Below are positions 11,341-64,000 of a DNA stretch of 64,000 nucleotides, in pieces (positions within the stretch are counted from its first letter, which is position 1; each line of letters begins with the position of its first letter). The DNA is from Octopus sinensis. Lineage: Eukaryota. A program made the translations under genes and the position numbers. The notes below the pieces were generated by a model, which did not search any database, was not told the origin of the DNA, and saw only the letters and a list, made by a program, of their open reading frames with translations. The DNA lies in the NCBI RefSeq assembly GCF_006345805.1, contig NC_043010.1:45942001-46006000 (forward strand). The letters are read 5' to 3'.

Positions 11341-13235
11341 GGATCTAGTTGGTTTGGCTGCCAGCATCAATTCTGTTTGAACTGATTTCATATTCAGTAG
11401 AATGATGCACTTTTATTGGCTAATGAATGATGTGAAAATCGTTTTCACTATAAATCAATAAATTTTAAACTTAAAAAATAGGACCAAGTGTTTATAATAC
11501 ATTTATCACATTAAAAACCTAACATAAAAAAATAGAGTAAAAAGATAAATCAATGAATTTAAAGAGTTATTAGCAATTAAAGTTTGAAAATTTTGGATAA
11601 TTTTAGCCAATTGTAAGCAACAGATACATTCATGCCTGTTTCCATAGTAACGAGTGGAACCAAGAACTCTTTTATCTGTGAGGAAGTAAGTGTTGATAAA
11701 TTTTACATGGTATTCTGTTGGAAATTTTACTGTTTGATTATGGCAGCAAGCTCCTGTAACCCCACTTCTATGATGAGTTGAGGCACATGGCCTGGTGGTT
11801 AGAGCAGCGAACTCGCGGTCAAGGGATTGCGGGTTCGAATCTCAGACCGAGTGATGTGTGTTTTTATGAGCGAAACACCTAAGCTCCATGTGTCTCTGGC
11901 AGAAGGTAATGGCAAACTTCTGCTGACTCTTTCGCCACAACTTTCTCTCACTCTTTCCTCCTGCATCTTGCAGCTCACCTGCAACAGACCAGCATCCCGT
12001 CCAGGTGGGGAACCTATACACCAAGGAAACCGGGAAACCGGCCCTTATGAGCCAGGTGTAGCTCAAGAAGGAACAAAAACTTTTATGATGCAAACACTGA
12101 AAACAGAGGAGAATATTGTGTTGTACCTTCAAGAAAAGGGTACAGTCCGAATCATGACACACTGGAAGAATTCCTACATCACTCAATTCTTCCAGGAACC
12201 ACAATTTTCAGTGATTTGTGGAGGGTGTACTCTCACATTTCTGAAGTTAGTGGTTACAATCTTAAGCATAGAACGGTGAACCACATTGTTGGGTTTGTTA
12301 ACTTGAAAGATGGTACCCACACTCAACAAGTGGAGAGTACGTGGGCCTCTGTGAAGCGAAGTAATAAATGACTCTGTGGCACTCACCATTCTATGGGAGA
12401 TTCATATCTCTGTGAATTTATGTGGCACAGGAGATACAAAAATTGTGATTTGTTTGAGAAATTGATTGAATGTATTTCTAGCTTGCATTTTTAATTATAA
12501 AAATATTTTGTAATAGTGTATGCTTAAATGTTTGTTTTTTAAACATATTTTGTTCACTCTTTTATTTCCATATATAACATATACACATGTACATCTTTTA
12601 GAACATTGACATTTTATAAGATTTTGCTGACAAATTTTTTAAATTAACATAAACATTTATTTACATGAAAGAAAATTACTGGAGAACCTTTATCTAATTC
12701 TTCAAATCTTTCTGTTAAAACTGTATTGAAACCATTTGTGGGGAAAAATTGTAATGCGTTTATTGCAGGTAACGTGTTGTTCATCGCATTTGCATTAAAT
12801 GCATATTGAATGCTTAAAACTACTTGTTTAAACGTTTCTTTTTGTCATTGATGTGGTTGTGATCTGTGCTAAAAATAACAGCTAAATAACGTTTTTTGGA
12901 TAAATCTTTTAAGTTTGTGCTATCGCATTAAATGCATATTGAATGCTTCAAACTACAAAACGCGTGTTGTTTACAAATATTGACAACACATGCTGCTTTC
13001 AGGATATTGATGACAAAATGTATAGTTATGCACAAATTGACAACTTCCAAATCCTGTTTTCTGATTGGGTGAAAATGATCAAAGTTTAAACGTCTATAAA
13101 TGTTTAAAAACATTTATCTGGAAAAATGAAATTACTCCAGCAATTCAGCTTGGAAAAGTATATTATTATACCAAATTTTAAAATTTTCCATAAACTTTAA
13201 TTTTTGAAATGCTGGCAGCCAAACCAGTTTGATCC
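11341..13235 (+). mobile_element. Merlin (IS1595/ISXO2-related) DNA transposon, deleted
   Basis: 8-bp TSD TTAAACAT (11333-11340 and 13236-13243); TIRs GGATCnnnnTGGTTTGGCTGCCAGCAT; transposase remnant 12147-12494 PNHDTLEEFLHHSILPGTTIFSDLWRVY...HRTVNH...FV...GTHTQQVESTW...SYLCEFMWHRR with one internal stop. Confidence 0.9.
11780..12088 (+). mobile_element. tRNA-derived SINE family C inserted in the Merlin element
   Basis: GGCACATGGCCTGGTGGTTAGAGC A-box, GGTTCGAATC B-box; a homologous copy lies at 43185-43500 (-). Confidence 0.85.
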
Positions 13236-15379: not shown

Positions 15380-17330
15380 TGATAATGTAAGAGTTAAGTA
15401 TATCCCCAAGAATATGAATTCTTCTCCCTGGGCCATGGATCATGATTTGATAGTTAACTTCAAGGTACATTATCTGAAAACTTCAAACAACTTATGATAG
15501 CAATTGACAGAGAAGATACACCTACAGATAGAAACTTAATAGATGCTGTAGATGATGTAGTTAAGTCATGGGATGAAGTGAAACCTTCAGCTTTGAATGG
15601 TACTTAGAGAAAATATATGACCAGATTGCTTCTGTGACTTCACAAGTTTTTTACGAGCAGAAAGTCTACACCAAATTCAGAAAGAGATTGTGGCTCTTGT
15701 ATTTGGTCATCAAGTATGAAATTTGTAGAAAAGACAAAAAAGTTTGCTAATGTTTTATAAATACAAGGAATAGTTTTATTCAGAAAATATGTACCCATAT
15801 TGTCAATACACTTTTGCCATTTCAACGGTAACTTGTCCAGCCCAGAACTGTAAAAGCTTTGCAATCCAGAGTCAATAAAATCTTGGAAGGCCTGTTTTAC
15901 AGCATCATTGGAATAAATTTTTTTTCCTATCAAAAAATTATACAAGTTTTGGAAGAAGTGGTAGTCAGTGGGGGAAAAATCAGGTGTGCATGGTGGATGA
16001 TGAAGAACTTCCAACTCCAACGCCTGTAGGTTCACCAGTGTCATTTTTGTGATGTGTGGTCTGGCGTTGTCTTGCAATAAAATAGGAGTGGATCTGTTGA
16101 CTAATCCAGGCTGCTTTTTTTGTAAGTTTTTGCATCATTTGATCCAGTTAGCTGCAGTGTACTTCAGCCGGGATTGATGAACCAGGTTTAATGAAATCAT
16201 AATGGATCACACCTGCACTAGACCACCAAACACACACCATCAGCTTCTTTCAATGAATTTTGCTTTTTGGACTGTGTTTTGGTGGCTCGTCTTTGTCCAA
16301 CCATTGTGCTGAATGTTTACAGTTGTTGTATTTGATCTGTTTCTTATCACATGTTACAATTCAGTTCAAAAATGATTCATTTTTGTGACGAAAAAGTAGC
16401 ATAATGCAGGCTTCCAAACGTTGCTGTTTCTGATTTTCATTGAGTTCATGTGGAACCCACTTATCCAACATTTTCACGTTACCAATTTGAACTAGATGAG
16501 TCAATATTATTTGCTTGCTAACACCAAACAGCAACAATAATTCACGGGCACTTTGAGATGGATCTGACACGATGGTGGCTTTCAGTTTGTCATTATCCAC
16601 CTTTGTTTCTGGTTGACCACGTTGCTCATTTGTGAGGTCAAAGTTACCAGAACGAAATTTTTCAAACCAATTTGATATTGCCTGCTGTGTAATAACATTA
16701 AAATGAAATATTTCATTAATATTCTGAGCTGTCTCTGATGCTGCATTTCCAAGAAAGAACTCATATTTCAAAACTGTACAAATTTCCGACTTATCCATCT
16801 CTAAACAAAAATAGCAAAAAACAATTTATAAATACTTTATAAGGCACAAAATGAGTTAGAATAAAGTAATAACTGTGTCAGCTTTCTAACAAAAAATAAA
16901 GTTTGTTAAAATATAAAAATGGTGCAAAATGAGCAATTGTCAAAGTTTACCATATACCTTACTTTAAATTTCATACTTGACGACCTAATAAATGATGGAG
17001 GGTTTGAAGAAGTCATAGGGGATGATGTGGTCGAGTTGCTAGTGTCCCATAGAGGAAGTTTATCTAATGACAAGTTGATGCTGCTAAAACTAGAGCAAGC
17101 TGAGAATACTGATAAGAATACAGAAATTCCACTCCACTTGAACTGACTGCAAAGAATATTGCTAACAGATTGGCACTTAAAGAGGAAGGTCTGCAAGTTT
17201 TTGTTGATAACGACTCTAATCGTGACTGTAACATAAAAATTACAAGTGGAGTTTTCAATGGTCTCACTTACTACGCTGATCTCCACAAAGTAATAAATGT
17301 ACTATAAACATCAAACAACTTTGGAAAAGT
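15380..17330 (+). mobile_element. Tigger/pogo transposase remnant split by a mariner
   Basis: VKYIPKNMNS..PMD..LIVNFKVHYL...WDEVKP left of the mariner; the reading KEIVALV|NDGGFEEV...DDVVELLVSH is in frame across the mariner TA site. Confidence 0.8.
15702..16988 (-). mobile_element. Full-length degenerate mariner (DD34D, 1287 bp)
   Basis: TA TSD; TIRs TTTGGTCATCAAGTATGAAATT / AATTTCATACTTGACGACCTAA; ORFs with WVPHEL, TCD, QDNARPH and SPTDYH, 34 residues between the second and third D; frameshifts and stops present. Confidence 0.95.
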
Positions 17331-19566: not shown

Positions 19567-21236
19567 TACATCAACCCCAGTATTTGACTGCTTTTTATTC
19601 CATTAACTCTCAAAGGATGTAAGACAAAGTTGACCTCAGTGGAATTTGAACTCAGAACATAAGAATGCCACTAAGCATTTTGTCCAGCAATAAAAATAAC
19701 TGTTTTTAAACTTTATACCTGGCTGTATGAGAAAGTAGTAGTTCATGTTTCTTTTTTGTTTCGAGAGTTTCAGCTGCTTACATTGTTATTTGTGGTTGTT
19801 GTTGCTATTTAACACTTGATTAAGCAACCTTATGTATTCCATATGTATTCCGGCCATAAACATGCTGTTCTTTTTTCAAAGCATAATGCATCTAGGACTA
19901 CATAATACAACATATCCACCCATTTTTAGAATGATAGGGTGTGATATAAAGAAGATTTGGTTATTGCTTCTAGCTGGTTGAGCAGCTATCTAAAGGCTTC
20001 TGTGTAAGCTCAGTTAGCTAGATACATACAAGTGAAATTAACTCACACCTGCCATAAATTGAAACTTTGTCACACTATAATTTTAGCTGAGGGGTAAAGT
20101 TCTGATGGTGTGGTTAAAGAAAGGCACAGAGAGAGGGGGGAGAGAGAGAGGAGGAGAGAGAAGAGGGATGGGGAGGGGAGAGAGTGGTGGTGGTGGTGGT
20201 GGAGGAGGAGGAAATGGCAGTGATGGTGATGGTGACTGGATAGTGGAAAGTTTATTTTTTTAATTGAACCAAGTTTTTTTATATCACCTATCACTTAACA
20301 CATGCGAATAAGTGCAATTCCATGAAATATTCACACTCATTTATGAGGCAGATATATGAAATTTAACTAAAGGTTGTATTATGTGTATGGGATATTTTTT
20401 TTTAGTTTATGGGGAAAATGGAAAAATAAGAATAAATATTTATTTTATGAGTGCTGTGTATTAAAGTCTATAAAATTGTGCATAAAGTATATTAAGTGTA
20501 TATATAAAATGCATTAAGTAGTACTCTTTTACTTGTTTCAGTCATTTGACTGTGGCCATGCTGGAGCACCGCCTTTAGTTGAGCAAATTGACCCCAGGAC
20601 TTATTCTGTGGATGCCTAGTACTTATTCTATCAGTCTCTTTTGCCGAACTGCTAAATTATGGGGACGTAAACACACCACCATCGGTTGTCAAGCGATGTT
20701 GGGGGGACAAACATATAAACACACATAAATATACATATACGTACATATATACGATGGGCTTCTTTCAGTTACCAACTCCACTCACAAGGCTTCGGTTGCC
20801 CCGAGGCTATAGTAAAAGACACTTGCCCAAGGTACCATGCAGTGGGAATGAACCTGGAACAAAGTGGTTGGTAAGCAAGCAACTTACCACACCTAATCAT
20901 TGTATTCCAATTTCTTTCACTTTTCAATGAGTACCAGATGAGCAGCTATCTTTCCATACAGACACAACACAGGCTACACTTTCAGGTTTATTGGATAAAG
21001 TTTTCAGAAATGACACTATAGATTTACCATTAAATCCATGAAATATTCACAGGTCCCACTAGTACTAACTAAACCTTCTAATCACTATGACCACTAATTC
21101 CTACAGTAGCACCTTCTATCAGTCATTTCTTCATCAGACATGAATAAATTAGAATAATACATTTACTTGTGTTTAATGTGCATTTCTAATTCTTGGTAAA
21201 GAAATCTTAAAAACCATACTCTCATGTATAACATAC

Positions 21237-21616: not shown

Positions 21617-21960
21617 TATAACATACACATTACGTTGGTGCTAAAGTAATTGCAAATTTTGTTTTGTTGACAAACAACTTTCACAATTACTTTTGTAACA
21701 TGGTTTTCATGTATAATGTACACCCTTAATTTTACTGTTTAAAAATCTGGGGAAAAGTATCTATTATGAATGAATAAATATAAAAAAATTGAACAGGAGT
21801 GGCTGTGTGGTAAGTAGCTTGCTTACCAACCACATGGTACCAGGTTCAGTCCCACTGCGTGGCACCTTGGGCAAGTGTCTTCTACTATAGCCTCGGGCCG
21901 ACCAAAGCCTTGTGAGTGGATTTGGTAGACGGAAACTGAAAGAAGCCCATCATATATATG

Positions 21961-22003
<43 letters not shown>

Positions 22004-22419
22004 CTGTGTGTCTGTTTTTGCCCCCCTAGCATTGCTTGACAACCGATGCTGGTGTGTTTATGTCTCCGTCACTAAGCGGTTCGGCAAAAGAGACCGATAG
22101 AATAAGTACTGGGCTTACAAAGAATAAGTCCCGGGGTCGAGTTGCTCGACTAAAGGCGGTGCTCCAGCATGGCCACAGTCAAATGACTGAAACAAGTAAA
22201 AGAGTTACTCAAAGGTAACTAAAAACTATTAAGCACCTACAGTGATTTCTATGCTAATTTTCCCCCCTACATTTACAACTATTTCCTAGTATTTCAGCAA
22301 GGTTTTCCATCAGTTTCATTCAAATTAGTTGACATACTTGACACCAGGATTGACCTGGGGCTAAACAACAAACATAGCAATGGCAACAAAAGAGTATACA
22401 TTGGAAAATGCTGTCCTTA

Positions 22420-24759: not shown

Positions 24760-26290
24760 TAATAATAACAATGATGAAATTATTGTATACAGTGCTCAGG
24801 TGCACCACAACTTGTCAGAAAGTGTGTATAAAGTATATACAGTAATGTACAAATGTCTGGAAAGCGAACAATGTATGAGTCAGATACATGCTTGTGTGTG
24901 TATGGAGGAGAGAAAATCAGGTGTAGTGTTGGCGAATCTCAGAAAGCATGGAAGTTTTGAAGGATGCAGTGCTCCAACAACTAACAACTGATGCCGGCAG
25001 TTTGTTCTATGCTTCAGCAACTCTCAGCGTGAAAAAAATGTTTCCTAAAGTCATGGGAGCTGTGCTGTTTTCTGACTTTGTAAATATGTCCATGGGTGGA
25101 GTTCGAAAAGGTGCTCAGAGTTATTGTTTGTAAGATGGTTAATAATTTTATGGGTGTCTGCCAAGTCAGCTGCCAGATGTTGGAGTTTCAATGTGTCCAT
25201 GCCCAGGGAAGTAAGGTGTTCAGAATATGGCAAATGCCTGATGGAGGGTATTCTTTTGGTTGCACGTCACTGAACGGCTTCCAGATGATTGATATCCTGG
25301 GCAAGATAGGGGTTCCAGACCGGTGATGCAAATTCCAGGTGAGGTCTTACCATAGCTATATAAAGCCGCAGATAGATAGTCGGAGAGCGGCTCACAAAGG
25401 ACTTGGTGAGTGATGCCAAGACACCCTCAGCTTTCTTGACAATTTTAGCGATGTGTTTTGTCCAACGCAAATCACTGTCGACAATAACACTCAGATCGCA
25501 TTCACATGAAGACTTTTTGAGATTAGTGTTGTGGAGGGAGTAGGTGGACGCTGATTTTCTCCTCCCAAAATGCATGGTGGTACATTTGTCCACAGCCAGC
25601 TTGAGTTGCCAGCCCATGATCCACTGCTGCATTGTGTCCAGGTCTGCTTGCAATAGAGATCTATAGTGTACAGGATCTGACCTCTTTATTTCGAGGTACA
25701 GCTTGATGTCATCTGCATATTTCAGCACTGTAGCATTCTTTAAGTTGGCATCTATGTCTTTTAACATATGCAACAAATAAAAGGGGGCCAAGAACAAATT
25801 CCTGTGGTACACCAGATGTCATCTCATAGGGCGAAGAGTGCTGTCTTAGAACTGTGACAACCTCTTTTCGGCCGAAAATAAAGGACTTCAAACAGTTATA
25901 GAGTTCGTCTCTTACGCCCAATGCAGAGAGTTTCACCATAAGCCTTTTGTGTGGCACAGAGTTAAAAGCCTTAGCAAAGTCCAGGTAAACAACATCCACC
26001 CAGGATCCGCGATCAGTGATTTGAGTAACATCCTCAAGAAACTCGATGAGTTGATTACAGCAGCTGGAGTTAGGAATAAATCCAAATTGTGACGGCTGGA
26101 TGAGGCTGTGAGACTTCCAGAAGTTCCAGAGGGTTTCCCTGATACAGGATTCCATAAGTTTGGTGATGCAGCTAGTAAGACTAACGGGACGATAGTTGAC
26201 AGGTGATGTGTGGTCACCTTTTTTGAACAGAGGGATAACACTGGCAGTTTTCCACTGCTCTGGAGTAACACCATTGTCAAGACAGAATTG
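24760..26290 (-). mobile_element. CR1-like LINE, 5'-truncated, frameshifted RT
   Basis: QPSQFGF, VYLDFAKAFNSVPH, SGVPQEFVLGPLLF, KYADD and VRPHLEFASPVWNPY; 3' UTR and (ATT)n tail. Confidence 0.95.
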
Positions 26291-28709: not shown

Positions 28710-29599
28710 CAACACATAGCCCAGTCTGGAAATCAAACTCATTACCTCACGATTGTGAGCCCACACTTTGGAGCGATACTTCACCTAAAGTTTATTGGAA
28801 GGTTTTAATTTTGATAACTTTAAAACAGTAAGTTTGCGTTATAGAACTAAGAATGGTGTCAGGCAGAATCATTGCTTTATCTGTTAATATATTGTAAGTT
28901 GTTGCTACTTCATCATCAAAATGAATGAACTGAAATGAATCAGGCATGGCTGTGTGGTAAGAAGCTTGCTTCCCAAGCACATGGTTCCAGGTTCAGTCCC
29001 ACTGCTTGGCACCTTGGGCAAGTGTCTTCTACTATAGCCTTGGGCCAAACAAATCTTTGTGAGTGGAGTTGGTAGATGAAAACAGAAAGAAGCTCAGTGT
29101 GTGTGTGTGTATGTGTGTGTGTGTGTGTGTGTGTTTGTCTCCCTGCCCCACCGCTTGACAACCAGTGTTGGCATGTGTATGTCCCCGTAACTTAACAGTT
29201 TAGCAAAAGAGACTGATAGAATAAGTATCAGGCTTTAAAAGAAATAACTCCTGGGTTGGATTTGTTCGACTAAAAACTCTTCAAGGTAGTGCCCCAGCAT
29301 GGCCACAGTCAGATGACTGAAACCAGTTAAGAACCAATAGTCAATACTTCTATGTTTGAAATAAACATCCCTATGACCATCCCCTGCATCACACACCAAT
29401 ACCCACCAGCACCACCACCACCACCACCAATACCTCACCACTCCCTGTAATCCATATTCTCAATATCAATAACAACCACTGATAAATTACCATTATCCAT
29501 CCCATTAGCTGTTCCTAATACAAACATCAACACAACTCCTACCACCTAAAACTTGTTCCTACTATAAGTGAAAAAAAAAGGACAGCACAGTCAGGTTTA

Positions 29600-37835: not shown

Positions 37836-39126
37836 GTAAGTTGAACAGTCCAGCCTTTTTACTACTACTACTACTACTACTATGACAATGACAATGACAA
37901 CTACTACTGCTACCACGACCACTGCCACCGCTGCTGCCGCCGCTGCTGCTGTTGCTGTTGAGCAAAGCAGTCTTCGTTCCATTATTGGGAGAAGTCTGAA
38001 ACGTGGTCCTTTGCTATTCATAAGACCCACAGAAGAGAGAACAGGTCAACCCCCCAACATCGATGGATGGATGAATGCGCATCCAGGCTCAGCGGTTGCA
38101 TGGGAAGTCGGAGACAAGAAACAAGAAGAAAGAGTGAGAGAAAGTCGGAGCGAAAGAGTACAACAGGGGTCGCCACCACCCCTGCCAGAGCCTCGTGGAA
38201 CTTTAGGTGTTTTCGCTCAATAAACACACACAACGCCCAGTCTGGGAATCGAAACCATGATCCTCCAACCACGAGTCCGCTGCCCTAACCACTGGGCCAT
38301 TGCGCCTCCACTTGCTGCTGCTGTTGCTATTACTGCCAGCCAATCTAGGCATATGCACAAAAGCAATTGAAACATCGATGGTGACAAATATTAGTCCCTA
38401 CCAAACTAATTTTATTGAAATTTTTTTGCATCCTCCAACTATCCCCCAATAAGGGGTTTCTAATTCAGGCATAAGGCCAAAACATTTGAGAGTATATGGT
38501 TAGTCAATCATATTGATCTCAGTACTTGACTGGTATTTTATTTTATCAACCCTTCAAGGAAACGAGACAAAGCAAAATGTGTGTGCCTGTGTGTCTGTGT
38601 TTGTCCTCCTGCCATTGCTTGACAACTGATGCTGGTATGTTTATGTCTCCATAACTTAGTAGTTTGGCAAAAGGGACCAATAAAATAAGTACTAGGCTTA
38701 CAAAGAACAAGTCTTGGGGTTAATTTCTTTGACTAAAACCCTTTAAGATCATGCTCCAGCATGGCTGCAGTCAAATGACTGAAACAAGTAAATGAGTAAA
38801 GAAGAATAGATACATACATACATCATCATCATCATCATTTAATATCCATTTTCCATGCTGGTGTAGGTTGGGTGGCTTGACAAGAACTGACTAAGCCAGG
38901 AGCCACACCAGATTCCATATCTGTTTTGGCTTGGTTTCTACAGCTGGATGCCCTTTGTAATGCCAACCACTTTACAGAGTGTACTGGATGCTTTTTTATG
39001 AGACACATATATAAACATATTATATCTAGAGCTACATTCTTCTGGTAAGTCAAAATAGTCTGATCTGAGAAAAATCTGGCTGTTATTTCTTGTAGCTTAG
39101 ATGACCACACAGAATTTCTTTATTCA

Positions 39127-39526: not shown

Positions 39527-39607
39527 TACTTAATATACCTCATATTTTCTAATGAAATACATTTCCATTTATTGAATTATTCTGTTTCTGCATGTTCTTT
39601 TTATTAG

Positions 39608-39847
39608 GACTTGGTTACGTTGCTGCACGCGAAATAGCTTCTCGCAATGCCCGTGTTATTCTAGCTTGCCGAAATGCTGAAAAAGCTAAAGCCGCAGTGG
39701 AAAAAATCATTTCAGAAACTGGAAAGAAAAACGTGGTCTTCATGAAGTTAGATGTAAGCTCTTTAAAATCTGTGAGAGAGTTTGCTAAACAGTTCCTGAA
39801 AGAAGAAAGTCGACTAGACATTTTGATAAACAATGCTGGTATCATTA
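39608..39847 (+). CDS. RDH-like SDR, coding exon 2
   Basis: Acceptor TTATTAG, donor GTAAGT at 39848; completes TGGNNGLG (TGxxxGxG) and encodes VILACRN, LDVSSLKSV and LDILINNAGII. Confidence 0.95.
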
Positions 39848-40029
39848 GTAAGTTTTACCCATTTCTTTTATTACATTTTCCTAAATCTTCCCTGAAAAAA
39901 AAAATAAACATATTTTCCAGAATATACTATGCACTCTAGCATAAGATGCATCTCTGTTTTACAGGAATATTCTATGGAAAATATTTTTTAGCATGTTTCA
40001 TCATGCACATATTGAAAAAATTATTAAAA

Positions 40030-43070: not shown

Positions 43071-43958
43071 CTTCCTCTGTATATGTGTGTGTGTGTGTGT
43101 GTGTTTATCCCCCATCACTGCTTGGCAACTGGTATCAATTTGTTTACATAGTGGTTCAGCAAAAGAGACCAATAGTGTAAGTTGTTGTTTGTTCCTTCTT
43201 GAGCCACGACTGGCTCATATGGACAGTTTCCTGGTTTCCTTGGTGTATAGGTTCCCCACCTGGACGGGATGCCAGTCCATTGCAGGTGAGCTGCAAGATG
43301 CAGGAGGAAAGGTGAGCTGCAAGATGCAGGAGGAAAGAGTGAGTGAAAGAGTCAGCATAAGTTCGCCATTACCTCTGCCGGATCCGCATGGAGCTTAGGT
43401 GTTTCACTCATAAACACACACATAGCCTGGTCTGAGATTTGAACCTGTGATCTCTTGACCATGAGTCTGCTGCCCTAACCACTAGGCCATGTGCCTTCAC
43501 AATAGTATAAGTACCAGGCTTAAAATATAAGTACTGGAGTCAGATCATTTAACTAAACTCCTCAAGGTGGTACCCCAGCACAGCCACAGTTCAAGTTAAA
43601 GATAAAAGATATTAAAATAACTAAAAATTATTAAAACTGTTGAGAAGACAAGTGAAATAACCGAAGCTTCATCCTTCTCTAGGAATGATTCTCAAAATGT
43701 TTCCATCTCTAAACTCTTTGTATTACACCTAAAACAAAGTTCCGAAAGAGCAGGCTAAGAGATTTTAAAAGGATAGCAATTAACCAAATCCCCTTAAGAA
43801 TACTATACTTCATAATAACTTTTAAGCAATCCTGATTCTCCAGAGTGATAACATCTACTTTAAGAAACAATAGACTATGTTAGAGACAACACCAAACTTC
43901 CCTTTGCCAACTCTTTGATAGACTGTTTTTAAAGTCCATGTCTTATTCTGTTCTATAG

Positions 43959-44683: not shown

Positions 44684-44893
44684 GTAAGTACTTGAAGTTA
44701 ACTGGTTACTTTTATTGCTATTTTTTTCTTTTTACATTTCATTTAATTTCATTACATTTAAATTTTTCTGGAGAGAAAAGTACATGACTATAGGCTTTCT
44801 AATTCCTCTGGACTTGAAGATTAAATTTTTGGTGCAATTTTATATGATGCAAGTATTTTTAAGAAGAGCTTATGTATAAGAATTGCTACAATC

Positions 44894-45343
44894 TGTAGCG
44901 TGACTGATATCCTCACTGTTTGAGAGACATATTAGGAATGATCTCGTAGTTGATAACAACCATCTTTGGCTAGTTTGACCCTGTTGTGTCCACTGCTCTG
45001 ATTGGTTGGCATTTGGCGCAGTTTGTCTTTGGACTTATTTTGCGCCAGTGTGTAAGCCAACCAATCACAGCCTTTGGATAAGGTCTCGTGACACTGTTTT
45101 TCTGATGCCCTGTTTGAGCCGCCTTAACCCTATAAAAAGGCCAGCATTCACTATTCTGCGAAGCAGAGGCACGTCTGAGGAGTTCCCGCCTAACTCCCTA
45201 AAACGACGCAAGAACTGTGACGGAGTTCTGTCCCCATGCTGCACATCCGCCATCTGGGTCAAACTAGCCAAAGATGGTTGTTATCTACCACGAGATCATT
45301 CCTAATATGTCTCTCAAACAGTGAGGATATCAGTCATGCTACA
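44894..45343. mobile_element. 450-bp TGT...ACA element with 88-bp TIRs, 4-bp TSD and a Gypsy gag fragment
   Basis: TSD AATC (44890-44893 and 45344-45347); TIRs 44894-44981 and 45256-45343 differ at 3 of 88 positions; CCAAT at 45061, TATAAAA at 45131; minus-strand GDRTPSQFLRRFRELGG. Confidence 0.9.
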
Positions 45344-45736
45344 AATCTTATCTATTGTTGTATCAACTTTTTCCCTAAGTTCCCATGAAAGGCAAAAAAC
45401 TTCCTAACCATATCTATGAATATATAAAATAGTTACAGACTCCTCAAGGGGAATTCATCTGACAGTCAGAATTCCCATCTAAATTTCTGATATGCTTCCA
45501 GCAACAAGATCATGATCCTACACTTAAGACAATACTATCAGACAAGAGTGCTTTGAAAATTGTACATAATCCATAGTGCTAATATAGAATGCTAATTTGA
45601 ATATTCCATTAACTATACTGTCTATCTAGTAGAAGTCAGTTTGTATGTGACAACTCTGAAGACTAATAAACTACATTTGCCTTTGATTGACCAAAGATAG
45701 CAGTTCATTCAACTAAATTCCTTTCACCTTTTTCAG

Positions 45737-45843: not shown

Positions 45844-45919
45844 GTTTGTTGAATATACATTTCTAAATTCGATTTAATCCATTTTCAAAACATTCTTTTA
45901 CTCTTTTACTTGTTGTAGT

Positions 45920-46286
45920 GGAGGCGCAATGGCCCAGTGGTTAGGGCAGCGGACTCGCAGTCATAGGATCGCGGTTTCGATCCCCAGACTGGGCGTTGTG
46001 AGTGTTTATTGAGCGAAAACACCTAAAGCTCCACGAGGCTCCGGCAGGGGATGGTGGTGATCCCTGCTGTACTCTCTCACTCTTACTTCCTGTTTCTGTT
46101 GTACCTGTATTTCAAGGGGCCGGCCTTGTCACTCTCTGTGTCACGCTGAATATCCCCGAGAACTACGTTAAGGGTGCACGTGCCTGTGGAGTGTTCAGCC
46201 ACTTACACGTTAATTTCATGAGCAGGCTGTTCCGTTGATTCGGATCAACCGGAACCCTCATCGTCGTAACCGACGGAGTGCTTCCC
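45920..46286 (+). mobile_element. Full-length family C tRNA-derived SINE with 12-bp TSD
   Basis: ACTTGTTGTAGT flanks both ends (45908-45919 and 46287-46298); inserted in a family A SINE; related heads at 38150-38312 (-), 57090-57245 (-) and 62515-62700 (+). Confidence 0.92.
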
Positions 46287-46960: not shown

Positions 46961-47677
46961 AAAGGAAAAAAATTATATGCCTTGTATCAATTCTTTTCCT
47001 TAATTGATTTTACATGCAGGCTACTCGATAAAATCTTATTTAGTGCAGTTATCCCCCTTACATTTGCTCGAAAGAGAGCGAGCTGGTAGAATCATAAAGC
47101 ACGATGGATAAAATGTCTAACTGCATAAAGCAGTGAACCTACAGAATTGTTAGCTTTCCTGACAAAATGCCTAACTACTGAACAGTGATTTGGTGGGATC
47201 ATTAGTACCCTCGACAAAATGACTACATTTCTTGCACCTATATGTAATTTTATATATTCTTTTACTCTTTTATAATGTTACTTCTCTCAGTCATTTGACT
47301 GTGGCCATGCTGGAGCACTGCCTTTAGTCGAGCAAATCGATCCCAGGACTTATTCTTTGTAAGCCTAGTGCTAATTTCATCGTCCCTTTTGCCAAACCGC
47401 TAAGTTACGGGCACGTAAACACACCAGCATCAGTTGTCAAGCAATGTTGGGGGGACAAACACAGACACACAAACATACACAAACTCAGACACACAAATAC
47501 AATCATATATATATATATACACACACATATACGATGGGCTTCTTTCAGTTTCCATCTACCAAATCTGTTCACAAGGCTTTGCTCAGCCTGAGGCTATAGT
47601 AGAAGACACTTGCCCAAGGTTCTACGCAGCTGGACAGAACCCGGTAAGCAAGGTACTTACTATACAGCCACTCCTGC

Positions 47678-47739
<62 letters not shown>

Positions 47740-48469: not shown

Positions 48470-49319
48470 AGCTTTTTTTTTTGTTGATGGCTTTATCAAC
48501 ATGAAGTACTTTTTTCCCATAAATTCTTTTATTCATGAACAAAACACTAACATGCACTCTCACATTTACACATTCATTCACTCATGCCCACTACCACACA
48601 CACACCACACACACACACACACACAGGGAGATATGCAGGAAATAGTTTTCCTCTCTATTATTTAGCTCAAGGGGAAGCTGTAGCCATGACCTCTACAGGC
48701 CATATCTGATGCATGTGATCAAGAACTGCCTATTAAATCCACTGCAATATTCTGCTTTATCATTCATGTTTTATCTTCAGGTGGTGTCCAAGATAAAGCA
48801 TCTGAAGTATGTGAGAGAGAATATTTTTCTTTCAAAATGTATGCTAATTTCACAACTGCCTGGGTCAATGAAATAAGTACCAGGTGTGTACAAGAGTGGA
48901 TTCAAATAATTATACCACCTGTTATAAGATGTGGCTTTGTGTCAATGGAAGAAATTATTATGATCATTATTGTTATTGATTATGTTGTTTGGTGGAATCA
49001 GTAGAGTGATGGATGAAATGCCTTTATGTATTGAGTTCAAATCCTACTGAGGTCAGTTTTGCTTTCCATCCCTCCAGAGTTAATAAAAGAATGAATCAGT
49101 CAATTACTGGGATTGATTTAATTGTCTGCCCCATCCCTAAATTTCAGGCTTTATATCTATAATAGAAACAATTATTATTATTATAGTTATTATTATTATT
49201 ATTATTAAGGTGGCAAGCTGGTAGAGTTGTTACCATGCCAGACTAAAATGTTTAACAACATTTTTCCTGTTTTATGTTCTGTGTTCAAATGCCACAGGGG
49301 TTGACTTTACTTGTCATCA

Positions 49320-50340
49320 TTTTGGTGTTGATAAAATAAGCACAGCGACCAATGTTCTTCTCAGTACTGGTGGTATACCAGCTAAGACAATCTTTTGCAC
49401 TTCCTGCATGGATGGTAAGCCAGAGATCATTCTTAAATAAATTTCAGTTCCTTTTTTGATCATTCCAAGTGCTCCTACAATCTCTGGTATTGTAACCATC
49501 TTGAGATGCCACATCTTTTTGATTAGCAAATCTCTATATTTTCTGAGCTTATCAAATTCTTTTGATGGGATATTATTGTCACAAGGTATGCTCATGTCAA
49601 TCAATAAACAGACTTTATTGTCTTGGTCTTTCACAAAAATATTTGGTTTATTAGCTTTGATGGTCCGGTCTGTACATACTGGGAAGTCCCAAAGAATCAT
49701 TATATTTTCTTCCTCAGTTACAACTTCTGGGTGGTGCTTGTACCATTTGTCAGCAGTTTTGATTTTATAATGCCGACACATTATCCAATGTAGATATTGG
49801 CCAACTCTGTCATGTTTTGATTTGTACTCTACAGGTGCTAAAACCTTACACTCAGAGATTAGGTGATCCACTGTTTCAATCCCATCATTGCAGTATTGGC
49901 ATTTTAAGTCTACACCATTTTTCATCACATTGGCTTCATAGTTCCAGGTCAATAAGCTCTGATCTTGAGCAACCAAGATAAAGCCTTCACTCTCTGCCTT
50001 TAGCCCTGGGCTCTGTATCCACTGATGGTTGTGCTTCTAGTCTCTGCCATTCAGAGGTTTTTGTTCCCACCTATCAGCCAATTGTTCAAATGCATTTTGC
50101 TTTGCCATTGATATCACTTTTTTGCAACTACGGTTGCCACACTTCCATCATGCTGTTCAACCTGGGTATTATGCATAAACCTACTTGAACATTTTTTGCT
50201 CTTCTTCATAACAGAATGAAATTTCTTATGTCTTTTGTGGTTTTCAACAAGCTTTAGCATCCAGTCATTAGATGCTTCAAGATATTTTGCCAGTTCAATT
50301 GTGGTGGTTTTGTAAGAGATTTCAAACTGGATCAATCTAA
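49320..50340 (-). mobile_element. R4/Dong-clade LINE C-terminus (CCHC finger plus restriction-like endonuclease)
   Basis: CQYC..GIETVDHLISEC, HDRVGQYLHW, ILWDFPV.TDRTIKANKPNI, LIDMSIP and KLRKYRDL; the catalytic PD motif reads PN. Confidence 0.92.
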
Positions 50341-50759: not shown

Positions 50760-51158
50760 GAAGAAGAACAATAAACACAAAATTTAACCTCAGCCAAACA
50801 TCAGTGTACAAAGATATGACAGCAGCAATAAACATCACAGAAGCACCTTTACAAGAAAACACAAACATCTTCTGGAGAAAAATCTGGAGTGAAGAAGAGT
50901 TTAACTGAAATGCTCTGTGTCTGGAAGAAATTTGAAGTAATTATTGTCCCTGCATTATACTCAAAACATACAGTATTGATGATGATACCCCTGTGACTGC
51001 AATTCAAAAACTTTAGGATGGAAAAGAACTAGGAAGAGATTTTATTGTTGGACACTGGTACAAGAAGATTGAGTTTTATCAACTTGTACCAAGAAGCTCT
51101 CCTTGAGAATAGGAGCGTACCACACTGCCTAGCTCTAGCAGAGACAAAACTGATCCCC
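50760..51158 (+). mobile_element. R4/Dong pre-RT and RT-start fragment
   Basis: FWRKIWS...NYC...TYSID...GRDFIVGHWYKK...NLYQ...LAETKLIP, with stops. Confidence 0.75.
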
Positions 51159-51619
51159 AGGGCCGACCAAAGCCTTGTGACTGGATTTGGTAGACGGAAA
51201 CGGAAAGAAGCCCATCATATATATGTATATATATATATATATATGTGTGTGTGTTCGTGTGTCTGTGTTTGTCCTCTTCAACATCGCTTGACAACTGATG
51301 CTGGTGTTTTTATGTCCCCGTACCATAGCGGTTCGGCAAAAGAGACTGATAAAATAAGTACTAGGCTTACAAAGAATTTGCTCGACTAAAGGCGGTGCTC
51401 CAGTATGGCCACAGTCAACTGACTGAAACAAGTAAAAGAGTAATTCACTATGATTAGTTGGAAATTAGGACATTACAACACCAACGACAATACGAACGTA
51501 CAAAACCAAGAAAACCACAATACTTACAGCAGCAACAACAATAACAACAACAACAACGATGACAGCAATAACTACAATAACATCGTGCACCTGCAGTAAC
51601 AACAACGATCACAACTGTA

Positions 51620-54589: not shown

Positions 54590-56298
54590 TAACACTTACT
54601 CTCTTGAACAAACTATGGATAGTCTTTCCACCTGACAGCAGTGTTGAGGCAATGCCTGTCCAAGCACCACTGCACATATTGCAGTTGTTCCTTCACAGAT
54701 AAGAAATTATGGTATTAAACATATAAGTTTTACCACAACCTCTTGGTGCATCAACATAGAAACAAGAGTGGTTTGGCACCTCACCTCTCCTATTCTTATC
54801 TACAGATTCAAACACGGTATTAGCAATCAGTCTCTGTCCATCAGTAAGTGTTGCAATGCCTGGATGATCGAGATCTTCATGATGGTCAAGCTGCAATACT
54901 CCAATAAGTTCAGGCAGCCCAATTACTAAACAATTAATGCCATTCTTTATGAGAATTGCATCAATTGAGTGCAGTGCTATGTTTTCTGTGTGTTCTGCAT
55001 TAAAACCTTGGTGCAAGAAATCTTCAGTCATGGATTCCTTATGAGTGGTCCACAGGTAAAGAGCATTTGCAGGTTCATATACGTGCACAGAGTAGCAAAC
55101 ATAACATGCAACTGTAAAGGCATCAAACAGGCAGCAGCTTCTAGCAAAGCACGTTCCAGTGTGTCATCATTTGAGAGAAGACCATATCTCAGGTATGCAG
55201 CCTTAAATGTTGGAAAGATGTCTCTTACAGTGCACAAATCCTGGAAGTTCACAGCACCTGAAACATGCAGCAGCAACATTCACAAGTGAAATTTTTCTTT
55301 ATCTCTAGGACTCACTGTGTATATTCAACTGATGATATTAGTATTCCTTTGCCTTGGTGTCTATGTTTTAGTTCACTCATTAAACGCATAATGAAGCGGA
55401 ATGTCAGAGTACAACTGGTTCCTTGCATCATCATCATCATCATGCTCATTCAGTTTGAACCATGCAGTGAAGGTAGTGTCAGGGTCCCTCTGTGCCTGAG
55501 TACTGCCTCTGTGAAAGTAAACTTCACAGTTTACTGGTCTCCAAGATGTACCGCAAGTCTGTAGACAGTGTGAGATGTGTTATGTAGCTTGACCTCTGAC
55601 AGTCTCCACATAACTTCCGGAGGAGAAACATATCGGCAAGCAAGATAATTAGTAATTTCCTTGTGAGCTTGATTCTGCTCACAATCTGCCACTGGGTTAA
55701 CTCCAAATGACACAAAGGAGAAAGTACAATTTTAATTTCTGATATTTCTACAGAATGAAATGGACTCTTGATCTTTTCTCTCAAATAAATTTTTTAGTAT
55801 CTCTGGATATAGTTGCAATGCAGGCATGTTCGCTTTTCCATTGTAGCAACAACTGTCATTTTCATTTCTAAACCTAGGCGCACCACAGTATTCACATATA
55901 ATGTTAATTTCTCCTAGGTTAAATTTTCCAAATTCATTAACAATAGCTCTGTTCAGCACTGGCCTCTGTCTTCTCACACGCTGTTGCTGCATCTGATGCC
56001 TCCTTAAATTGTCAATTTCACCAGCATTCATATTTTGTACTCTTTCTAGATATCTTCTTCTTTGGTTTTACTGATAAATAACCCTGTCATGTTGATTCAT
56101 GTTCTCTACTCTTTGCTGAGAAAAGTTTCTCTGCTGCTTGTGGTTCTGTGCATGCTGTTCAGTTTCTGTCTACCAAATCCACTCACAAGACTTTGCTTGG
56201 CCTAATGCTATAGTTGCCCAAGTTGTCACACAGTGGGACTGAACTCAGAACCTTGTGGCAGGGAAGCAAGTTTCTTACCACACAGCTACACATGTGCC

Positions 56299-56720: not shown

Positions 56721-57246
56721 AACGTGCATAGTTAATTTAATGTTTATTTAATTTAGTGATTTTTTTAATAATATTTATTATAGTATATTTAAATTTTTTC
56801 TATATAATATAGATAATGTCTTTCACTATTGAATTGCTTAATAGAAGTTATTTCTCTTAATTATATACATGTATATATATATATATATATATAAGAATTT
56901 TTTGCATATTAAGATAAAAAACCAAGGCTGTGTAGATATATATATCACATGATCACATGATCGACCAGACCATCAAATGTTGCTACACATCGCTGGTCAC
57001 AATGTGTTCGCATTGTTTTAGCCTTCGAACGACGCCACCCCGCTGGCTAAGCGAGCAGGCCAACAGAAGAAAGAGAGAAAGAGTGGTGAAAGAGTACAGC
57101 AGGGATCACCATCCCCTGCCGGAGCCTCGTCGAGCTTTTAGGTGTTTTCGCTCAATAAACACACACAACGCCCGGTCTGGGAATCGAGACCGCGATCCTA
57201 CGACTGCGAATCCGCTGCCCTAACCACTGGGCCATTGCGCCTCCAC

Positions 57247-62488: not shown

Positions 62489-64000
62489 TATGTGTATATA
62501 TATATATATATAGGTGGAGGCACAATGGCTCAGTGGTTAGGGCAGTGGACTCGCTGTCGTACGATTGCGGTTTCGATTCCCAGACCGGGTGTTGTGAGTG
62601 TTTATTGAGCGAAAACACCTAAAGCTCCACAAGGCTCTGGCAGTGGGTGGTGGCGATCCCTGCTGTACTCTTTCACCACAACTTTCTCTCACACTTTCTT
62701 TTCTTGGCCTGCTCGCTTAGCCAGCGGGGTGGCGTCATTTGAAGGCTAAAAACAATGCAAAGCGCATTGTGACCAGCGATGTGTAGCAACATCTGATAGC
62801 CTGGTCGGTCACGGTGATATATATATATATATGACATATTTCCACACGTTTTCCACCTACCAAATTTACCCATAAGCCATTGGTCAGCTTAGGGTTATAG
62901 TAGAAGACATTTGCCCAAGGCGCATTGAGACTGAACCCAAAGCCACATGGTTGCAAAGCAAGCTTCTTTACCACAAAGTGCTTATCAAAATAATTTAAAA
63001 TAGAACTATTGTATGGCCATGTGGTTAAATTTAATGTTTAGGGTATTTTAGCATTGAAATGAGGTAATAATCCAAATAAGGCGATAATCTCCCAGTCTGT
63101 CAAATAACAAACAGCTGTGGAAAATCAGAAGCAAACAACAATGTAAAAATGAGCCTTCTGTTTACAAAGATGGTGCAACATGTCAAGAGACCCACACCTG
63201 TTTTTTCAGTAGACTCTGCCACAAGTAGATGACACCATTAGCAAATATATTGTTTACAACTAGCAAATGAACATGTGTAGACATAGAAACCTGAACTCTC
63301 ACACACACACACACATGCACACATGATGGGCTGCTTTCAGTTTCTGTCTACCAATTTCACTCCCAAGGCTTTGGTCAGCTCAGAGTTATAGTAGGTACCA
63401 CAAGTATGACTGAACCCCAAATCATCTGGTTGGGAAGTGAGTTTCTTAACCAAACAGCCATAACTAAACCTATTTTTTTATCAATAAACTTAAGGAAGCT
63501 CTTAACTTTGCTGAAATTAACAGCAAGAGAGAAAGAGGGTGTGAACCAAATAACAACACCTTAGCAACATGCAGGCCCAAGGAAACCACTTACACATCCA
63601 GCCTAAACCTACCTAAAAGACAACACTGCATAGTTACTTGATTCACACTTGCTTTTTTTCAATATTAGACCCTGCCAAAGTTAGACTTTCCTTTAGAGAA
63701 TTGATAAACATTTTCCTCTCTCACACAGGTATAGAAAGCTTTTCAGTAGACAAACTTAAGGTCTCCATCAGTTGTGCAGCCAACATAGAGAGAATCCATT
63801 TGTTGAAAATTCTTCAGGCTATTTTTGGTAGAGATTTTTTTTATTTATTCTTTTTATAAACATTTTCAAAGAAAGAAAAAATACCCCAAAATAAGGGCAC
63901 AGATTTTAGCAAGTATTTTAGATATTTTCTTTTGTTAGAAAAAAAGTATGTCTGTAATAATAGTTTTAGAAAGTAAAAGCCATTTGCTGTGGAATAAAAA

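What the first reader, a model, noticed from the sequence alone, without database searches (positions are those of the whole stretch)
44894..45343. LTR-retrotransposon parts rebuilt into a TIR element that inserted as a unit
Seen: TGT...ACA ends, 88-bp inverted termini (85/88 identical), an exact 4-bp TSD (AATC), an LTR-like promoter set (ATTGG 45001, CCAAT 45061, TATAAAAAGG 45131), an internal inverted pair (TGATTGGTTGGC / GCCAACCAATCA) and an antisense fragment GDRTPSQFLRRFRELGG..PLLR. Known: that peptide resembles the GDRKPSQ.LR.MR.LAG motif of invertebrate Gypsy gag; Gypsy integrases and the related Ginger transposases use TG/CA ends and 4-5 bp TSDs. Inference: a Gypsy LTR-gag molecule folded back to carry the same LTR end twice and was then integrated or mobilised as a miniature DNA-type element, which would be an LTR-to-TIR conversion.
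Basis: partly seen in the sequence, partly recalled or inferred. Interest (0 to 1): 0.8.

Follow-up and report, generated by a model that had tools for sequence, protein, structure and literature searches.

The report
Small inverted-repeat element built from retrotransposon parts
A 450-base mobile-DNA relic in what looks like an octopus genome combines a promoter-bearing, LTR-like end used twice in opposite orientation with a backwards scrap of a Gypsy retrotransposon coat gene. It is an interesting one-off that I could not show to be a jumping family.

Summary
Window 44894-45343 has 88-bp terminal inverted repeats (85/88), TGTAG...CTACA tips and AATC on both sides.

- **Gag fragment:** 45151-45255 (minus strand) is codons 86-120 of the DUF7041-type gag of octopus Ty3/Gypsy elements. 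That clade has TGTAG... LTR tips and 4-bp target duplications.
- **Left arm:** the left arm and the next ~170 bp (two opposed CCAAT boxes, TATA) are one contiguous unit. It is about 70% identical to the 5' end of ~1-kb solo units in Octopus sinensis. Those units have asymmetric TGTAG...CTACA ends, a promoter and a poly(A) signal, so they look like LTRs.
- **Right arm:** it is only the first 88 bp of that unit, inverted and fused directly to the gag piece.

The parts are therefore retrotransposon-derived, and the whole most likely went in as one piece through an integrase-type enzyme.

Not shown:
- that the ~1-kb units are true LTRs, since no full element carrying them was found;
- that other copies of this element exist;
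- how the chimera formed; a simple fold-back does not fit.

A Ginger-type MITE with captured filler DNA remains a live rival. Interest is moderate.

The parts
44890..44893 (.). Left copy of the 4-bp flanking direct repeat AATC (putative target-site duplication)
   Evidence: Read directly. It is identical to 45344-45347.
44894..44981 (+). Left terminal inverted repeat, 88 bp, tip TGTAGCGTGACTGATATCC. It corresponds to roughly the first 100 bases of the LTR-like unit.
   Evidence: Matches the right arm at 85/88. Homologous to the 5' ends of L003:7226..., L003:13748... (inverted) and L010:4293... (minus strand) in O. sinensis.
44982..45156 (+). Continuation of the same LTR-like unit, a promoter-like region with ATTGG (45001), CCAAT (45061) and TATAAAAAGG (45131). 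The last ~10 bases (45147-45156) overlap junction A.
   Evidence: Contiguous 70% identity from 44909 to 45120 with L003:7244-7435, E = 1e-22. By eye the match runs on through the TATA box. The same motif order is seen in X (L003) and Z (L010).
44995..45071 (.). Inverted pair GCTCTGATTGGTTGGC / GCCAACCAATCACAGC, two opposed CCAAT boxes 45 nt apart
   Evidence: pair I3, 15/16 complementary. These are the best-conserved blocks between the window element and O. sinensis X.
45147..45156 (.). Junction A, between the LTR-like part and the antisense gag. It lies about 16-25 nt after the start of the TATA box.
   Evidence: Relatives of both parents carry ATATTC or ATATTT at this point, so the crossover lies in a short microhomology.
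45151..45255 (-). Fragment of a Ty3/Gypsy gag gene (DUF7041 type), codons 86-120, antisense to the left arm and in the natural 5'LTR-to-gag orientation relative to the right arm
   Evidence: phmmer E = 1.2e-6, 2.1e-5 and 4.7e-5. blastp up to 76% identity over 34 aa. DNA identity 70-78% to eight octopus gag genes. Homology starts at the inner edge of the right arm and ends near 45150.
45256..45343 (-). Right terminal inverted repeat, 88 bp: an inverted copy of the first 88 bases of the left arm
   Evidence: Homology to the LTR-like unit stops at position 88, where the gag fragment begins.
45344..45347 (.). Right copy of the 4-bp flanking direct repeat AATC
   Evidence: Read directly.
45065..45271 (-). 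68-aa open frame that contains the gag-derived 35 codons. It is a by-product, not a gene.
   Evidence: Only residues 10-43 are homologous to gag. Pfam finds nothing in the peptide alone. The exact sequence is absent from the 15e9-protein collection.

Best explanation
The element is a non-coding, non-autonomous chimera with three parts.
1. The first ~255 bp of an LTR-like unit: tip TGTAGCG, two opposed CCAAT boxes and a TATA box.
2. 105 bp of a Ty3/Gypsy gag gene (codons 86-120), in antisense.
3. An inverted copy of the first 88 bp of the same LTR-like unit.

The molecule therefore carried the same LTR 5' (U3) tip at both ends. It was inserted in one step by an integrase-type DDE enzyme, which left the 4-bp duplication AATC.

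The most economical source is a Gypsy particle. In this scenario an aberrant cDNA began normally at U3 base 1, switched template twice at short microhomologies, and ended by copying back its own 5' end. Alternatively, two broken cDNA ends were joined head to head. The family's own integrase, which needs only the TGTAG/CTACA tips and makes 4-bp duplications, then inserted it.

**Shown:** the composition of every segment, the junction positions, the inverted arms and the flanking repeat.
**Inferred:** that the arm is a true LTR, that the insertion was a single event, which enzyme did it, and how the chimera formed.

No cellular function is implied. The element does carry an intact-looking CCAAT/TATA promoter that points through the gag scrap and the right arm.
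For: - **Structure:** arms 85/88 identical with AATC on both sides.
- **Gag identity:**
- **Gag belongs to Ty3/Gypsy elements:** RVT_1, RT_RNaseH, Integrase_H2C2 and rve follow it between 410-560-bp LTRs.
- **The clade's ends and duplications fit:** LTRs start TGTAGTGA and end TTACA or CTACA. Duplications are 4 bp: CACC and CAGT are clear, AAAG and TATA are compatible.
- **The left arm plus promoter region is one contiguous unit:** it is homologous to three O. sinensis units that share the TGTAGC tip.
- **Those units look like LTRs, not TIR transposons:** X has asymmetric ends (TGTAGCG...CTCTACA), a TATA-like box at about position 212 and AATAAA at about 743 (read from the sequence). A second, internally deleted copy keeps the same two unlike ends.
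- **Orientation:** the right arm and the gag piece lie in the natural 5'LTR-to-gag order.
- **Microhomology at junction A**.
- **Flank symmetry:** the flanks read outward match at 12/19, with an empirical frequency of 2%, as expected for a symmetric integrase or transposase complex.
Against: - No full-length element with X-, Z- or window-type units as direct LTRs next to a primer-binding site and polypurine tract was found in 207 kb of octopus DNA. All three relatives are solo, and the two X copies lack a clean target duplication.
- These units do not align with the LTRs of the four sampled Gypsy families, although those LTRs barely align with each other.
- The gag fragment is only 70-78% identical to every sampled gag gene, so its source family was not found.
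- There is a single copy in the window and no TIR-arranged copy elsewhere.
- A 4-bp flank match has a 1/256 chance.
- The proposed way of forming the chimera rests on one sequence.
Confidence: 0.42

Rival explanations
1. It is an ordinary miniature inverted-repeat element of a cut-and-paste family that uses an integrase-like transposase (Ginger2/TDD type). The 88-bp arms are the family's TIRs, the CCAAT/TATA region is the subterminal or promoter part of the autonomous parent, and the gag scrap is filler DNA copied in during abortive gap repair.
For: - TGTAG fits the TGTNR tip rule.
- The TSD is 4 bp and AT-rich.
- An 88-bp TIR lies inside the 50-180 bp range reported for Ginger2 (PMC2836005).
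- Ginger2 MITEs of 531-651 bp with TSD consensus WRTH are known, and AATC fits WRTH (PMC3845634).
- Gypsy sequence is abundant in these genomes, so it is a likely filler.
- Microhomology at the junction also fits gap repair.
Against: - The O. sinensis relatives of the arm have unlike ends. An internally deleted copy keeps those same two unlike ends. None is in a TIR arrangement. This is not what a TIR family looks like.
- No Ginger-type or other integrase-like coding sequence was found near any copy, and a Gypsy integrase and RT query hit nothing else in the window.
- The target CAATCT matches the Ginger2 preference RTATAY at only 3 of 6 positions.
Confidence: 0.28
2. It is not a unit insertion. 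Two copies of an LTR-bearing element, or an LTR and a Gypsy copy, landed head to head nearby, and a later deletion or rearrangement fused them. The matching AATC flanks are coincidence.
For: - Nested and adjacent insertions followed by deletions are common in this kind of genome. L003 shows X copies and a Gypsy interleaved, and L009 shows an insert in a Gypsy leader.
- The arms differ at 3 of 88 positions, which two separate copies could also explain.
- Only one copy is known.
Against: - It needs a 1/256 coincidence for the flanks.
- It also needs both outward-facing ends to be the exact element tip.
- The outward flank symmetry of 12/19 (about 2% by chance) is unexplained under this model.
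- Every base between the tips is accounted for by three neat segments with microhomology at the joint.
Confidence: 0.13
3. The LTR-derived inverted-repeat element is a mobilised family, a nascent DNA-type element that is repeatedly cut or copied and re-inserted by a Gypsy integrase or a Ginger transposase.
For: - The element has the same structural features as above.
- The gag piece is about 22-30% diverged from all sampled gag genes, although the arms are 96.6% alike. This could mean the chimera is older than this particular insertion.
Against: - There is no second copy in 64 kb of the source genome, nor in 207 kb of two other octopus genomes.
- No protein in a 1.84e9-sequence library matches the non-gag part of the 68-aa frame.
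- Retroviral-type integrases are not known to excise DNA (my own knowledge).
Confidence: 0.15

Closest known systems
Ginger2/TDD non-autonomous elements (MITEs), for example Ginger2_NA of Bombyx mori and Rhodnius prolixus (PMC3845634; PMC2836005)
   Same: TGTNR...YNACA tips, 4-bp AT-rich target duplication, TIRs of tens to about 180 bp, a size of a few hundred bp and no coding capacity.
   Different: No link to a Ginger transposase could be shown. The arm's relatives in O. sinensis are asymmetric, promoter-bearing, LTR-like units rather than TIR elements. The interior holds a Gypsy gag fragment fused directly to one arm.
Octopus Ty3/Gypsy LTR retrotransposons with DUF7041-type gag (copies in L001, L002, L003 and L005 of O. 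sinensis)
   Same: Source of the gag fragment. They have TGTAG... and ...TACA tips and a 4-bp target duplication. The right arm and the gag piece are in the natural LTR-to-gag orientation.
   Different: The window element is 450 bp. It has no RT, integrase, primer-binding site or polypurine tract. Its ends are inverted copies of one LTR tip rather than direct LTRs. Its arm sequence does not align with the LTRs of the sampled families.
Hypothesis for the origin of Ginger1 TIRs from two LTRs in opposite orientation (Bao, Kapitonov and Jurka 2010, PMC2836005, Discussion)
   Same: An LTR tip present at both ends in inverted orientation, giving a TIR element with integrase-type tips and TSD.
   Different: That hypothesis concerns LTRs flanking an integrase gene and producing an autonomous transposon. 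Here nothing is encoded and the duplicated part is only 88 bp.
Solo LTRs and non-autonomous LTR elements (TRIM/LARD)
   Same: LTR-derived, non-coding, TG...CA tips and a short TSD.
   Different: Those have one LTR or two direct LTRs. This one has an LTR 5' part plus an inverted 88-bp copy of its own tip.
Gene-fragment-carrying TIR elements (Pack-MULEs; GingerRoot elements carrying gene fragments, PMC6839031)
   Same: A foreign coding fragment lies between TIRs.
   Different: GingerRoot has a 6-bp TSD and TA...TA tips. MULEs have 8-10-bp TSDs (my own knowledge). Here the captured piece comes from a retrotransposon that shares the element's tip and TSD style.

Membership tests
Ginger2/TDD non-autonomous element | Tips follow 5'-TGTNR ... 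YNACA-3' | tested here: met
   The tips are TGTAG ... CTACA. The rule is taken from PMC2836005.
Ginger2/TDD non-autonomous element | 4-bp TSD at AT-rich targets (preference RTATAY) | tested here: inconclusive
   The TSD AATC is 4 bp and 75% A+T. The 6-bp context CAATCT matches RTATAY at 3 of 6 positions. It does fit the WRTH consensus of the Bombyx Ginger2 MITE.
Ginger2/TDD non-autonomous element | TIRs of about 50-180 bp | tested here: met
   88 bp, 85/88 identical.
Ginger2/TDD non-autonomous element | Same TIRs as an autonomous element encoding an H2C2 + DDE Ginger transposase | not testable with these tools
   No DNA search of the source genome is available. A Gypsy integrase query found nothing in the window and no transposase lies near the O. 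sinensis relatives. The relatives have unlike ends, which argues against membership.
Ginger2/TDD non-autonomous element | Multi-copy family with different TSDs | not testable with these tools
   There is one copy in 64 kb and none in 207 kb of O. sinensis and O. bimaculoides. Collection scans found 0 hits, but those collections are not expected to hold octopus DNA.
Ty3/Gypsy LTR retrotransposon or a derivative of one | gag and/or pol sequence of Ty3/Gypsy type | tested here: met
   35 codons of DUF7041-type gag. That gag lies upstream of RT, RNase H and integrase in O. sinensis.
Ty3/Gypsy LTR retrotransposon or a derivative of one | Two LTRs in direct orientation | tested here: not met
   The two arms are inverted.
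Ty3/Gypsy LTR retrotransposon or a derivative of one | Primer-binding site after the 5' LTR and polypurine tract before the 3' LTR | tested here: not met
   There is no TGGTGA-type primer-binding site and no purine or pyrimidine run of 9 or more in the element. The sampled Gypsy copies do have TGGTGACCCC and GAGGGGGAG-type tracts.
Ty3/Gypsy LTR retrotransposon or a derivative of one | TG...CA tips and a TSD of the length made by the family's integrase | tested here: met
   TGTAG...CTACA with a 4-bp TSD. The local clade gives CACC and CAGT (clear) and AAAG and TATA (compatible).
LTR (identity of the arm and of its O. sinensis relatives X and Z) | TG...CA unit with promoter (U3), transcribed R and poly(A) signal | tested here: met
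   X has TGTAGCG...CTCTACA ends, ATTGG and CCAAT boxes, a TATA-like box at 212 and AATAAA at about 743. Z has the same order. A poly(A)-tailed copy of the X transcribed region exists in L009.
LTR (identity of the arm and of its O. sinensis relatives X and Z) | Found as a direct pair flanking gag-pol with a primer-binding site and polypurine tract, or as a solo copy with a TSD | tested here: not met
   All three relatives are solo. X-left (TTTC / TACC) and X-right have no clean TSD, and Z's 3' end could not be placed, so no TSD could be read for it. No primer-binding site or polypurine tract is adjacent to any of them. The sample is only 207 kb and the copies are old (77-86% identical), so this is a weak negative.
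MITE (generic) | Small, non-coding, with TIRs and a TSD | tested here: met
MITE (generic) | High copy number and homogeneous family | not testable with these tools
   The source genome cannot be searched as DNA.

The most novel reading that the evidence does not exclude
A Gypsy LTR tip was duplicated in inverted orientation on an aberrant cDNA and the product became a transposable inverted-repeat family moved by an integrase-type enzyme. That would be a natural, caught-in-the-act example of the LTR-to-TIR step proposed for the origin of Ginger DNA transposons.
Probability: 0.12. Interest if true: 0.75.

Novelty: new variant of a known kind. Interest (0 to 1): 0.45.

Why it matters
Integrase-related DNA transposons (Ginger1, Ginger2/TDD, GingerRoot) share tips and TSDs with Gypsy elements. 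It has been proposed, without examples, that their TIRs arose from LTRs placed in opposite orientation (PMC2836005).

This would be a concrete intermediate for that idea: a small element whose two ends are the same LTR-like tip, that carries a scrap of Gypsy gag, and that shows an integrase-type 4-bp duplication. It would also show that an integrase can insert a DNA with two U3 ends in vivo.

If it proves to be a one-off or a plain Ginger-type MITE, it is ordinary. In practical terms it is a non-coding repeat carrying a conserved CCAAT/CCAAT/TATA promoter that could drive read-out transcription.

Tried and rejected
- **Pfam on the 71-aa antisense peptide:** no family matched.
- **Word-indexed protein search with that peptide:** no candidates. 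Only the exhaustive phmmer run found the gag relatives.
- **Exact look-ups:** the element's ORFs and six other window ORFs are absent from the gene-position index and the 15e9-protein collection.
- **Collection scans:** exact-pattern scans of metagenome and prokaryote-genome contigs for the arm and for the conserved CCAAT block returned 0 hits. These collections are not expected to hold octopus DNA.
- **Species identification:** the short-chain dehydrogenase exon gave best hits of only 60-69% identity and no named animal.
- **Extending gag homology past codon 120:** DNA identity falls to 10-27%, so the TATA box is not antisense gag.
- **An older X-like copy at the insertion site:** a 16/17 match in the left flank scores no better than shuffles (30 against a mean of 29.4), so I rejected this idea.
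- **Aligning X or the arm to the LTRs of four sampled Gypsy families:** nothing aligned.
- **Rfam at gathering and at E <= 1 on the element and on X:** only a sub-threshold hairpin match, so ribozyme-bearing Penelope or retrozyme types are not supported.
- **Other superfamilies:**
  - Sola1 was rejected on its TSD and tips as given in a paper read here (AWWT with GGACC tips).
  - GingerRoot likewise (6 bp with TA tips).
  - hAT (8-bp TSD), piggyBac and Kolobok (TTAA), Polinton (6 bp with AG tips) and DIRS (no TSD) were rejected from my own knowledge.
- **Simple fold-back:** rejected because the arms are only 88 bp of a 450-bp element and the interior is asymmetric.
- **Autointegration:** rejected because the LTR tips face outward and are free.
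- **Handling of Gypsy copies:** I examined them only piecewise (LTR ends, ORF-by-ORF domain scans). No whole element was extracted, assembled or printed.

Full report
**What is there.** Window 44894-45343 is a 450-bp element. Its first and last 88 bases are reverse complements of each other at 85 of 88 positions, and identity collapses immediately beyond position 88. The tips read TGTAGCG... and ...CATGCTACA, and AATC lies directly outside both tips. Within the window the arm pair scores E = 4e-37. A 25-nt tip pattern with up to 3 mismatches occurs only at these two places, against none expected in shuffles. ATTGG (45001), CCAAT (45061), TATAAAAAGG (45131) and the 16-nt inverted pair around the two CCAAT boxes are all present. 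The element is 46% G+C in a 37% G+C window.

**Where the window comes from.** The window is eukaryotic and rich in transposons.
- It holds a Mos1-type transposase N-terminus and reverse-transcriptase fragments.
- It holds a PIF1-like helicase fragment and a short-chain dehydrogenase exon.
- Its repeats match Octopus sinensis loci at up to 95% identity and O. bimaculoides loci at up to 91%.
- The best relatives of the gag scrap are all from Octopus.

I take it to be an octopod, probably not one of the three annotated Octopus species, because its dehydrogenase exon found no close protein. This is an inference.

**The gag fragment.**
- *Protein-level hits.* The antisense frame reads MADVQHGDRTPSQFLRRFRELGGNSSDVPLLRRI. 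Pfam and the word-indexed protein search saw nothing. An exhaustive phmmer run against 1.84e9 representative proteins gave three Octopus proteins at E = 1.2e-6, 2.1e-5 and 4.7e-5, each aligned at residues 86-122 or the equivalent.
- *The family.* Two of the three carry Pfam DUF7041 just before the matched stretch; the third begins at the matched stretch. The two full-length ones end in a CWYH...C...PC knuckle. A profile search returned 94 relatives, led by about 40 paralogues from O. sinensis, O. bimaculoides and O. vulgaris.
- *Identity.* The best protein identity is 76% over 34 residues.
- *DNA-level match.* The window matches eight such genes at 70-78% over about 100 bp. The best is L005 at E = 1.6e-19.
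- *Limits of homology.* Homology begins exactly at the inner edge of the right arm (45255/45256) and ends near 45150. Beyond that, identity falls to 10-27%.
- *Uniqueness in the window.* A tblastn of the gag protein against the whole window hits only here.

**That gag belongs to Ty3/Gypsy elements.** In O. sinensis locus L001 the gag gene is followed on the same strand by ORFs with RVT_1, RT_RNaseH, Integrase_H2C2 and rve, all between two 410-bp direct repeats that are 99.5% identical. L003 shows the same order. L002 and L005 have LTR pairs of 562 and about 430 bp. These LTRs begin TGTAGTGA(C/T)..., end ...TTACA or ...CTACA, and are followed by TGGTGACCCC-type primer-binding sites. Their target duplications are 4 bp: CACC (L002) and CAGT (L005) are unambiguous, while AAAG (L003) and TATA (L001) are compatible. 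The local Gypsy clade therefore has the same tip style and TSD length as the window element.

**The arms.** This is the main new result.
- *Contiguous unit.* The left arm does not stop being homologous at position 88. Window 44909-45120 aligns at 70% (149/213, E = 1e-22) with L003:7244-7435. By eye the match starts at the shared TGTAGCG tip and runs on through the TATA box.
- *Unit X.* The L003 sequence is the 5' part of a 910-bp unit, X (L003:7226-8135). X begins TGTAGCGT and ends CTCTACA. It carries ATTGG, two CCAAT boxes and a TATA-like box at about 212, and AATAAA about 530 nt later. It ends in a strong hairpin.
- *Second X copy.* An inverted, internally deleted copy at L003:13525-13748 keeps X 1-115 and X 806-910, the same two unlike ends.
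- *Unit Z.* A third relative, Z (L010, minus strand from about 4293), starts TGTAGCAATATCG. It has the same order of ATTGG, CCAAT and TATAAATAAGG, with a later AATAAA.
- *Evidence of transcription.* A poly(A)-tailed copy of the transcribed part of X sits in the leader of a Gypsy copy in L009.

These units are therefore discrete, promoter-bearing, polyadenylation-signal-bearing TG...CA units with asymmetric ends, which is what LTRs look like. None is arranged as an inverted-repeat element. However, all three are solo, the two X copies lack a clean TSD, none is next to a primer-binding site or polypurine tract, and none aligns to the LTRs of the sampled Gypsy families. 'LTR' is therefore a well-motivated inference, not a demonstration.

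**Anatomy.** Every base is accounted for:

| Window coordinates | Segment |
|---|---|
| 44890-44893 | AATC, left flanking repeat |
| 44894 to about 45150 | LTR-like unit, bases 1 to about 255 |
| about 45147-45156 | Junction A, where relatives of both parents carry ATATTC or ATATTT |
| 45151-45255 | gag codons 120 down to 86, antisense |
| 45256-45343 | LTR-like unit bases 88 down to 1, inverted |
| 45344-45347 | AATC, right flanking repeat |

Read on the minus strand, the right arm and the gag piece lie in the natural 5'LTR-to-gag order with about 1 kb missing between them. The element has no primer-binding site, polypurine tract, poly(A) signal or pol sequence.

**How it most likely arose.** The tips face outward and are exact, and a 4-bp repeat flanks them. 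The flanks read outward from the element are also more alike than usual: 12 of 19 positions, seen in 2% of control pairs. This points to one insertion event by a symmetric DDE enzyme acting on a DNA with the same tip at both ends.

All three ingredients can come from a single Gypsy particle: an LTR-like arm, gag in the right orientation to one arm, and a TSD of the clade's length. My preferred scenario is therefore an aberrant cDNA. The strand would start normally at U3 base 1, switch template near the transcription start into antisense gag, and then copy back its own first 88 bases. Head-to-head joining of two broken cDNAs is an alternative. The Gypsy integrase would then insert the product.

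The formation step is inference from one sequence. I put this explanation at about 0.42.

**Rivals.**
- *Ginger2-type MITE with captured filler.* This fits the tips, the TSD length and AT-richness, the TIR length and the size. I could not exclude it because no tool here searches the source genome as DNA. The asymmetric ends of the O. sinensis relatives and the absence of any transposase argue against it. About 0.28.
- *Two independent head-to-head insertions fused by deletion, with a chance TSD.* This needs a 1/256 coincidence plus exact tips. About 0.13.
There is one copy in the window, no TIR-arranged copy in 207 kb of two other octopus genomes, and no protein in a 1.84e9-sequence library that matches the non-gag part of the open frame.

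**Comparison and novelty.** The element works like a non-autonomous integrase-type TIR element and resembles Ginger2 MITEs in every measurable end feature. Membership fails on the one defining point that could be approached, since its arm's relatives are not TIR elements. It is derived from Ty3/Gypsy parts but is not an LTR retrotransposon: the ends are inverted and there is no primer-binding site, polypurine tract or pol. The nearest idea in the literature is the suggestion that Ginger1 TIRs came from two LTRs in opposite orientation (PMC2836005). I rate it a new variant of a known kind, of moderate interest. The interest would rise sharply if copies with the same junctions exist, and fall to ordinary if an autonomous Ginger with these arms is found.

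**Unexplained.** The six bases of left flank that lie 3 nt upstream of the element (GCTACA, 44885-44890) are the exact reverse complement of the element tip, giving GCTACA-ATC-TGTAGC. This resembles an abutted-ends junction but is only 6-7 nt long and may be chance.

Noticed in passing
window 44885-44899: The left junction reads GCTACA-ATC-TGTAGC. The flank carries the exact reverse complement of the element tip 3 nt away, like an abutted-ends (circle-junction-like) motif. It is only 6-7 nt long and may be chance.
   Followed up: partly
L003:7226-8135, L003:13525-13748, L010:~3230-4293 (minus strand): O. sinensis carries ~1-kb solo units (X, Z) with a TGTAGC tip, two opposed CCAAT boxes plus TATA, and a later AATAAA. 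X also has a terminal hairpin before CTCTACA. They look like LTRs, but no full element carrying them was seen.
   Followed up: partly
L009:9155-9792: A poly(A)-tailed insert in the leader of an internally deleted Gypsy copy is 75% identical over 291 bp to the transcribed part of X. This suggests X-type units are transcribed and their RNA is retroposed.
   Followed up: partly
window 15640-16798 (minus strand): Mariner/Mos1-like transposase remnants. The ORF at 16361-16798 has the HTH_48 domain (E = 2e-11). The ORF at 15640-16077 looks like the C-terminal catalytic part by eye, but Pfam gave no hit.
   Followed up: partly
window 25267-26280 (minus strand) and 49317-49976 (minus strand): Non-LTR reverse-transcriptase fragments (RVT_1, E = 1e-13 and 2e-7) and an ORF with a weak zf-RVT match.
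   Followed up: partly
window 39592-39850 (plus strand): An exon-like ORF of a short-chain dehydrogenase of retinol-dehydrogenase type (adh_short, E = 2e-15). No close protein was found in the 5.8e9-protein search; the best hit was 69% identical.
   Followed up: partly
window 54693-55088 (minus strand); L003:750-1223: PIF1-like helicase fragments, which probably mark Helitron-type elements. The window match is weak and the L003 match is strong (E = 6e-28).
   Followed up: no
window 45917-46101, 57061-57246, 38139-38312, 62514-62676, 11776-11902, 43327-43500: A repeat family of about 180 bp (SINE-like) with six copies in the window. It is also present in O. sinensis and O. bimaculoides loci at 86-92% identity.
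   Followed up: no
window 21794-22208, 2985-3339, 47257-47695, 797-1168, 20522-20884, 51156-51443, 28941-29330: A repeat family of about 400 bp with at least seven copies in the window. It is shared with O. sinensis locus L002 at up to 89% identity.
   Followed up: no
L001:16011-20675 and L001:1371-5900: A long 49-bp-period satellite array, and a large inverted duplication (arms up to 776 nt, 96% complementary) that includes reverse-transcriptase ORFs.
   Followed up: no
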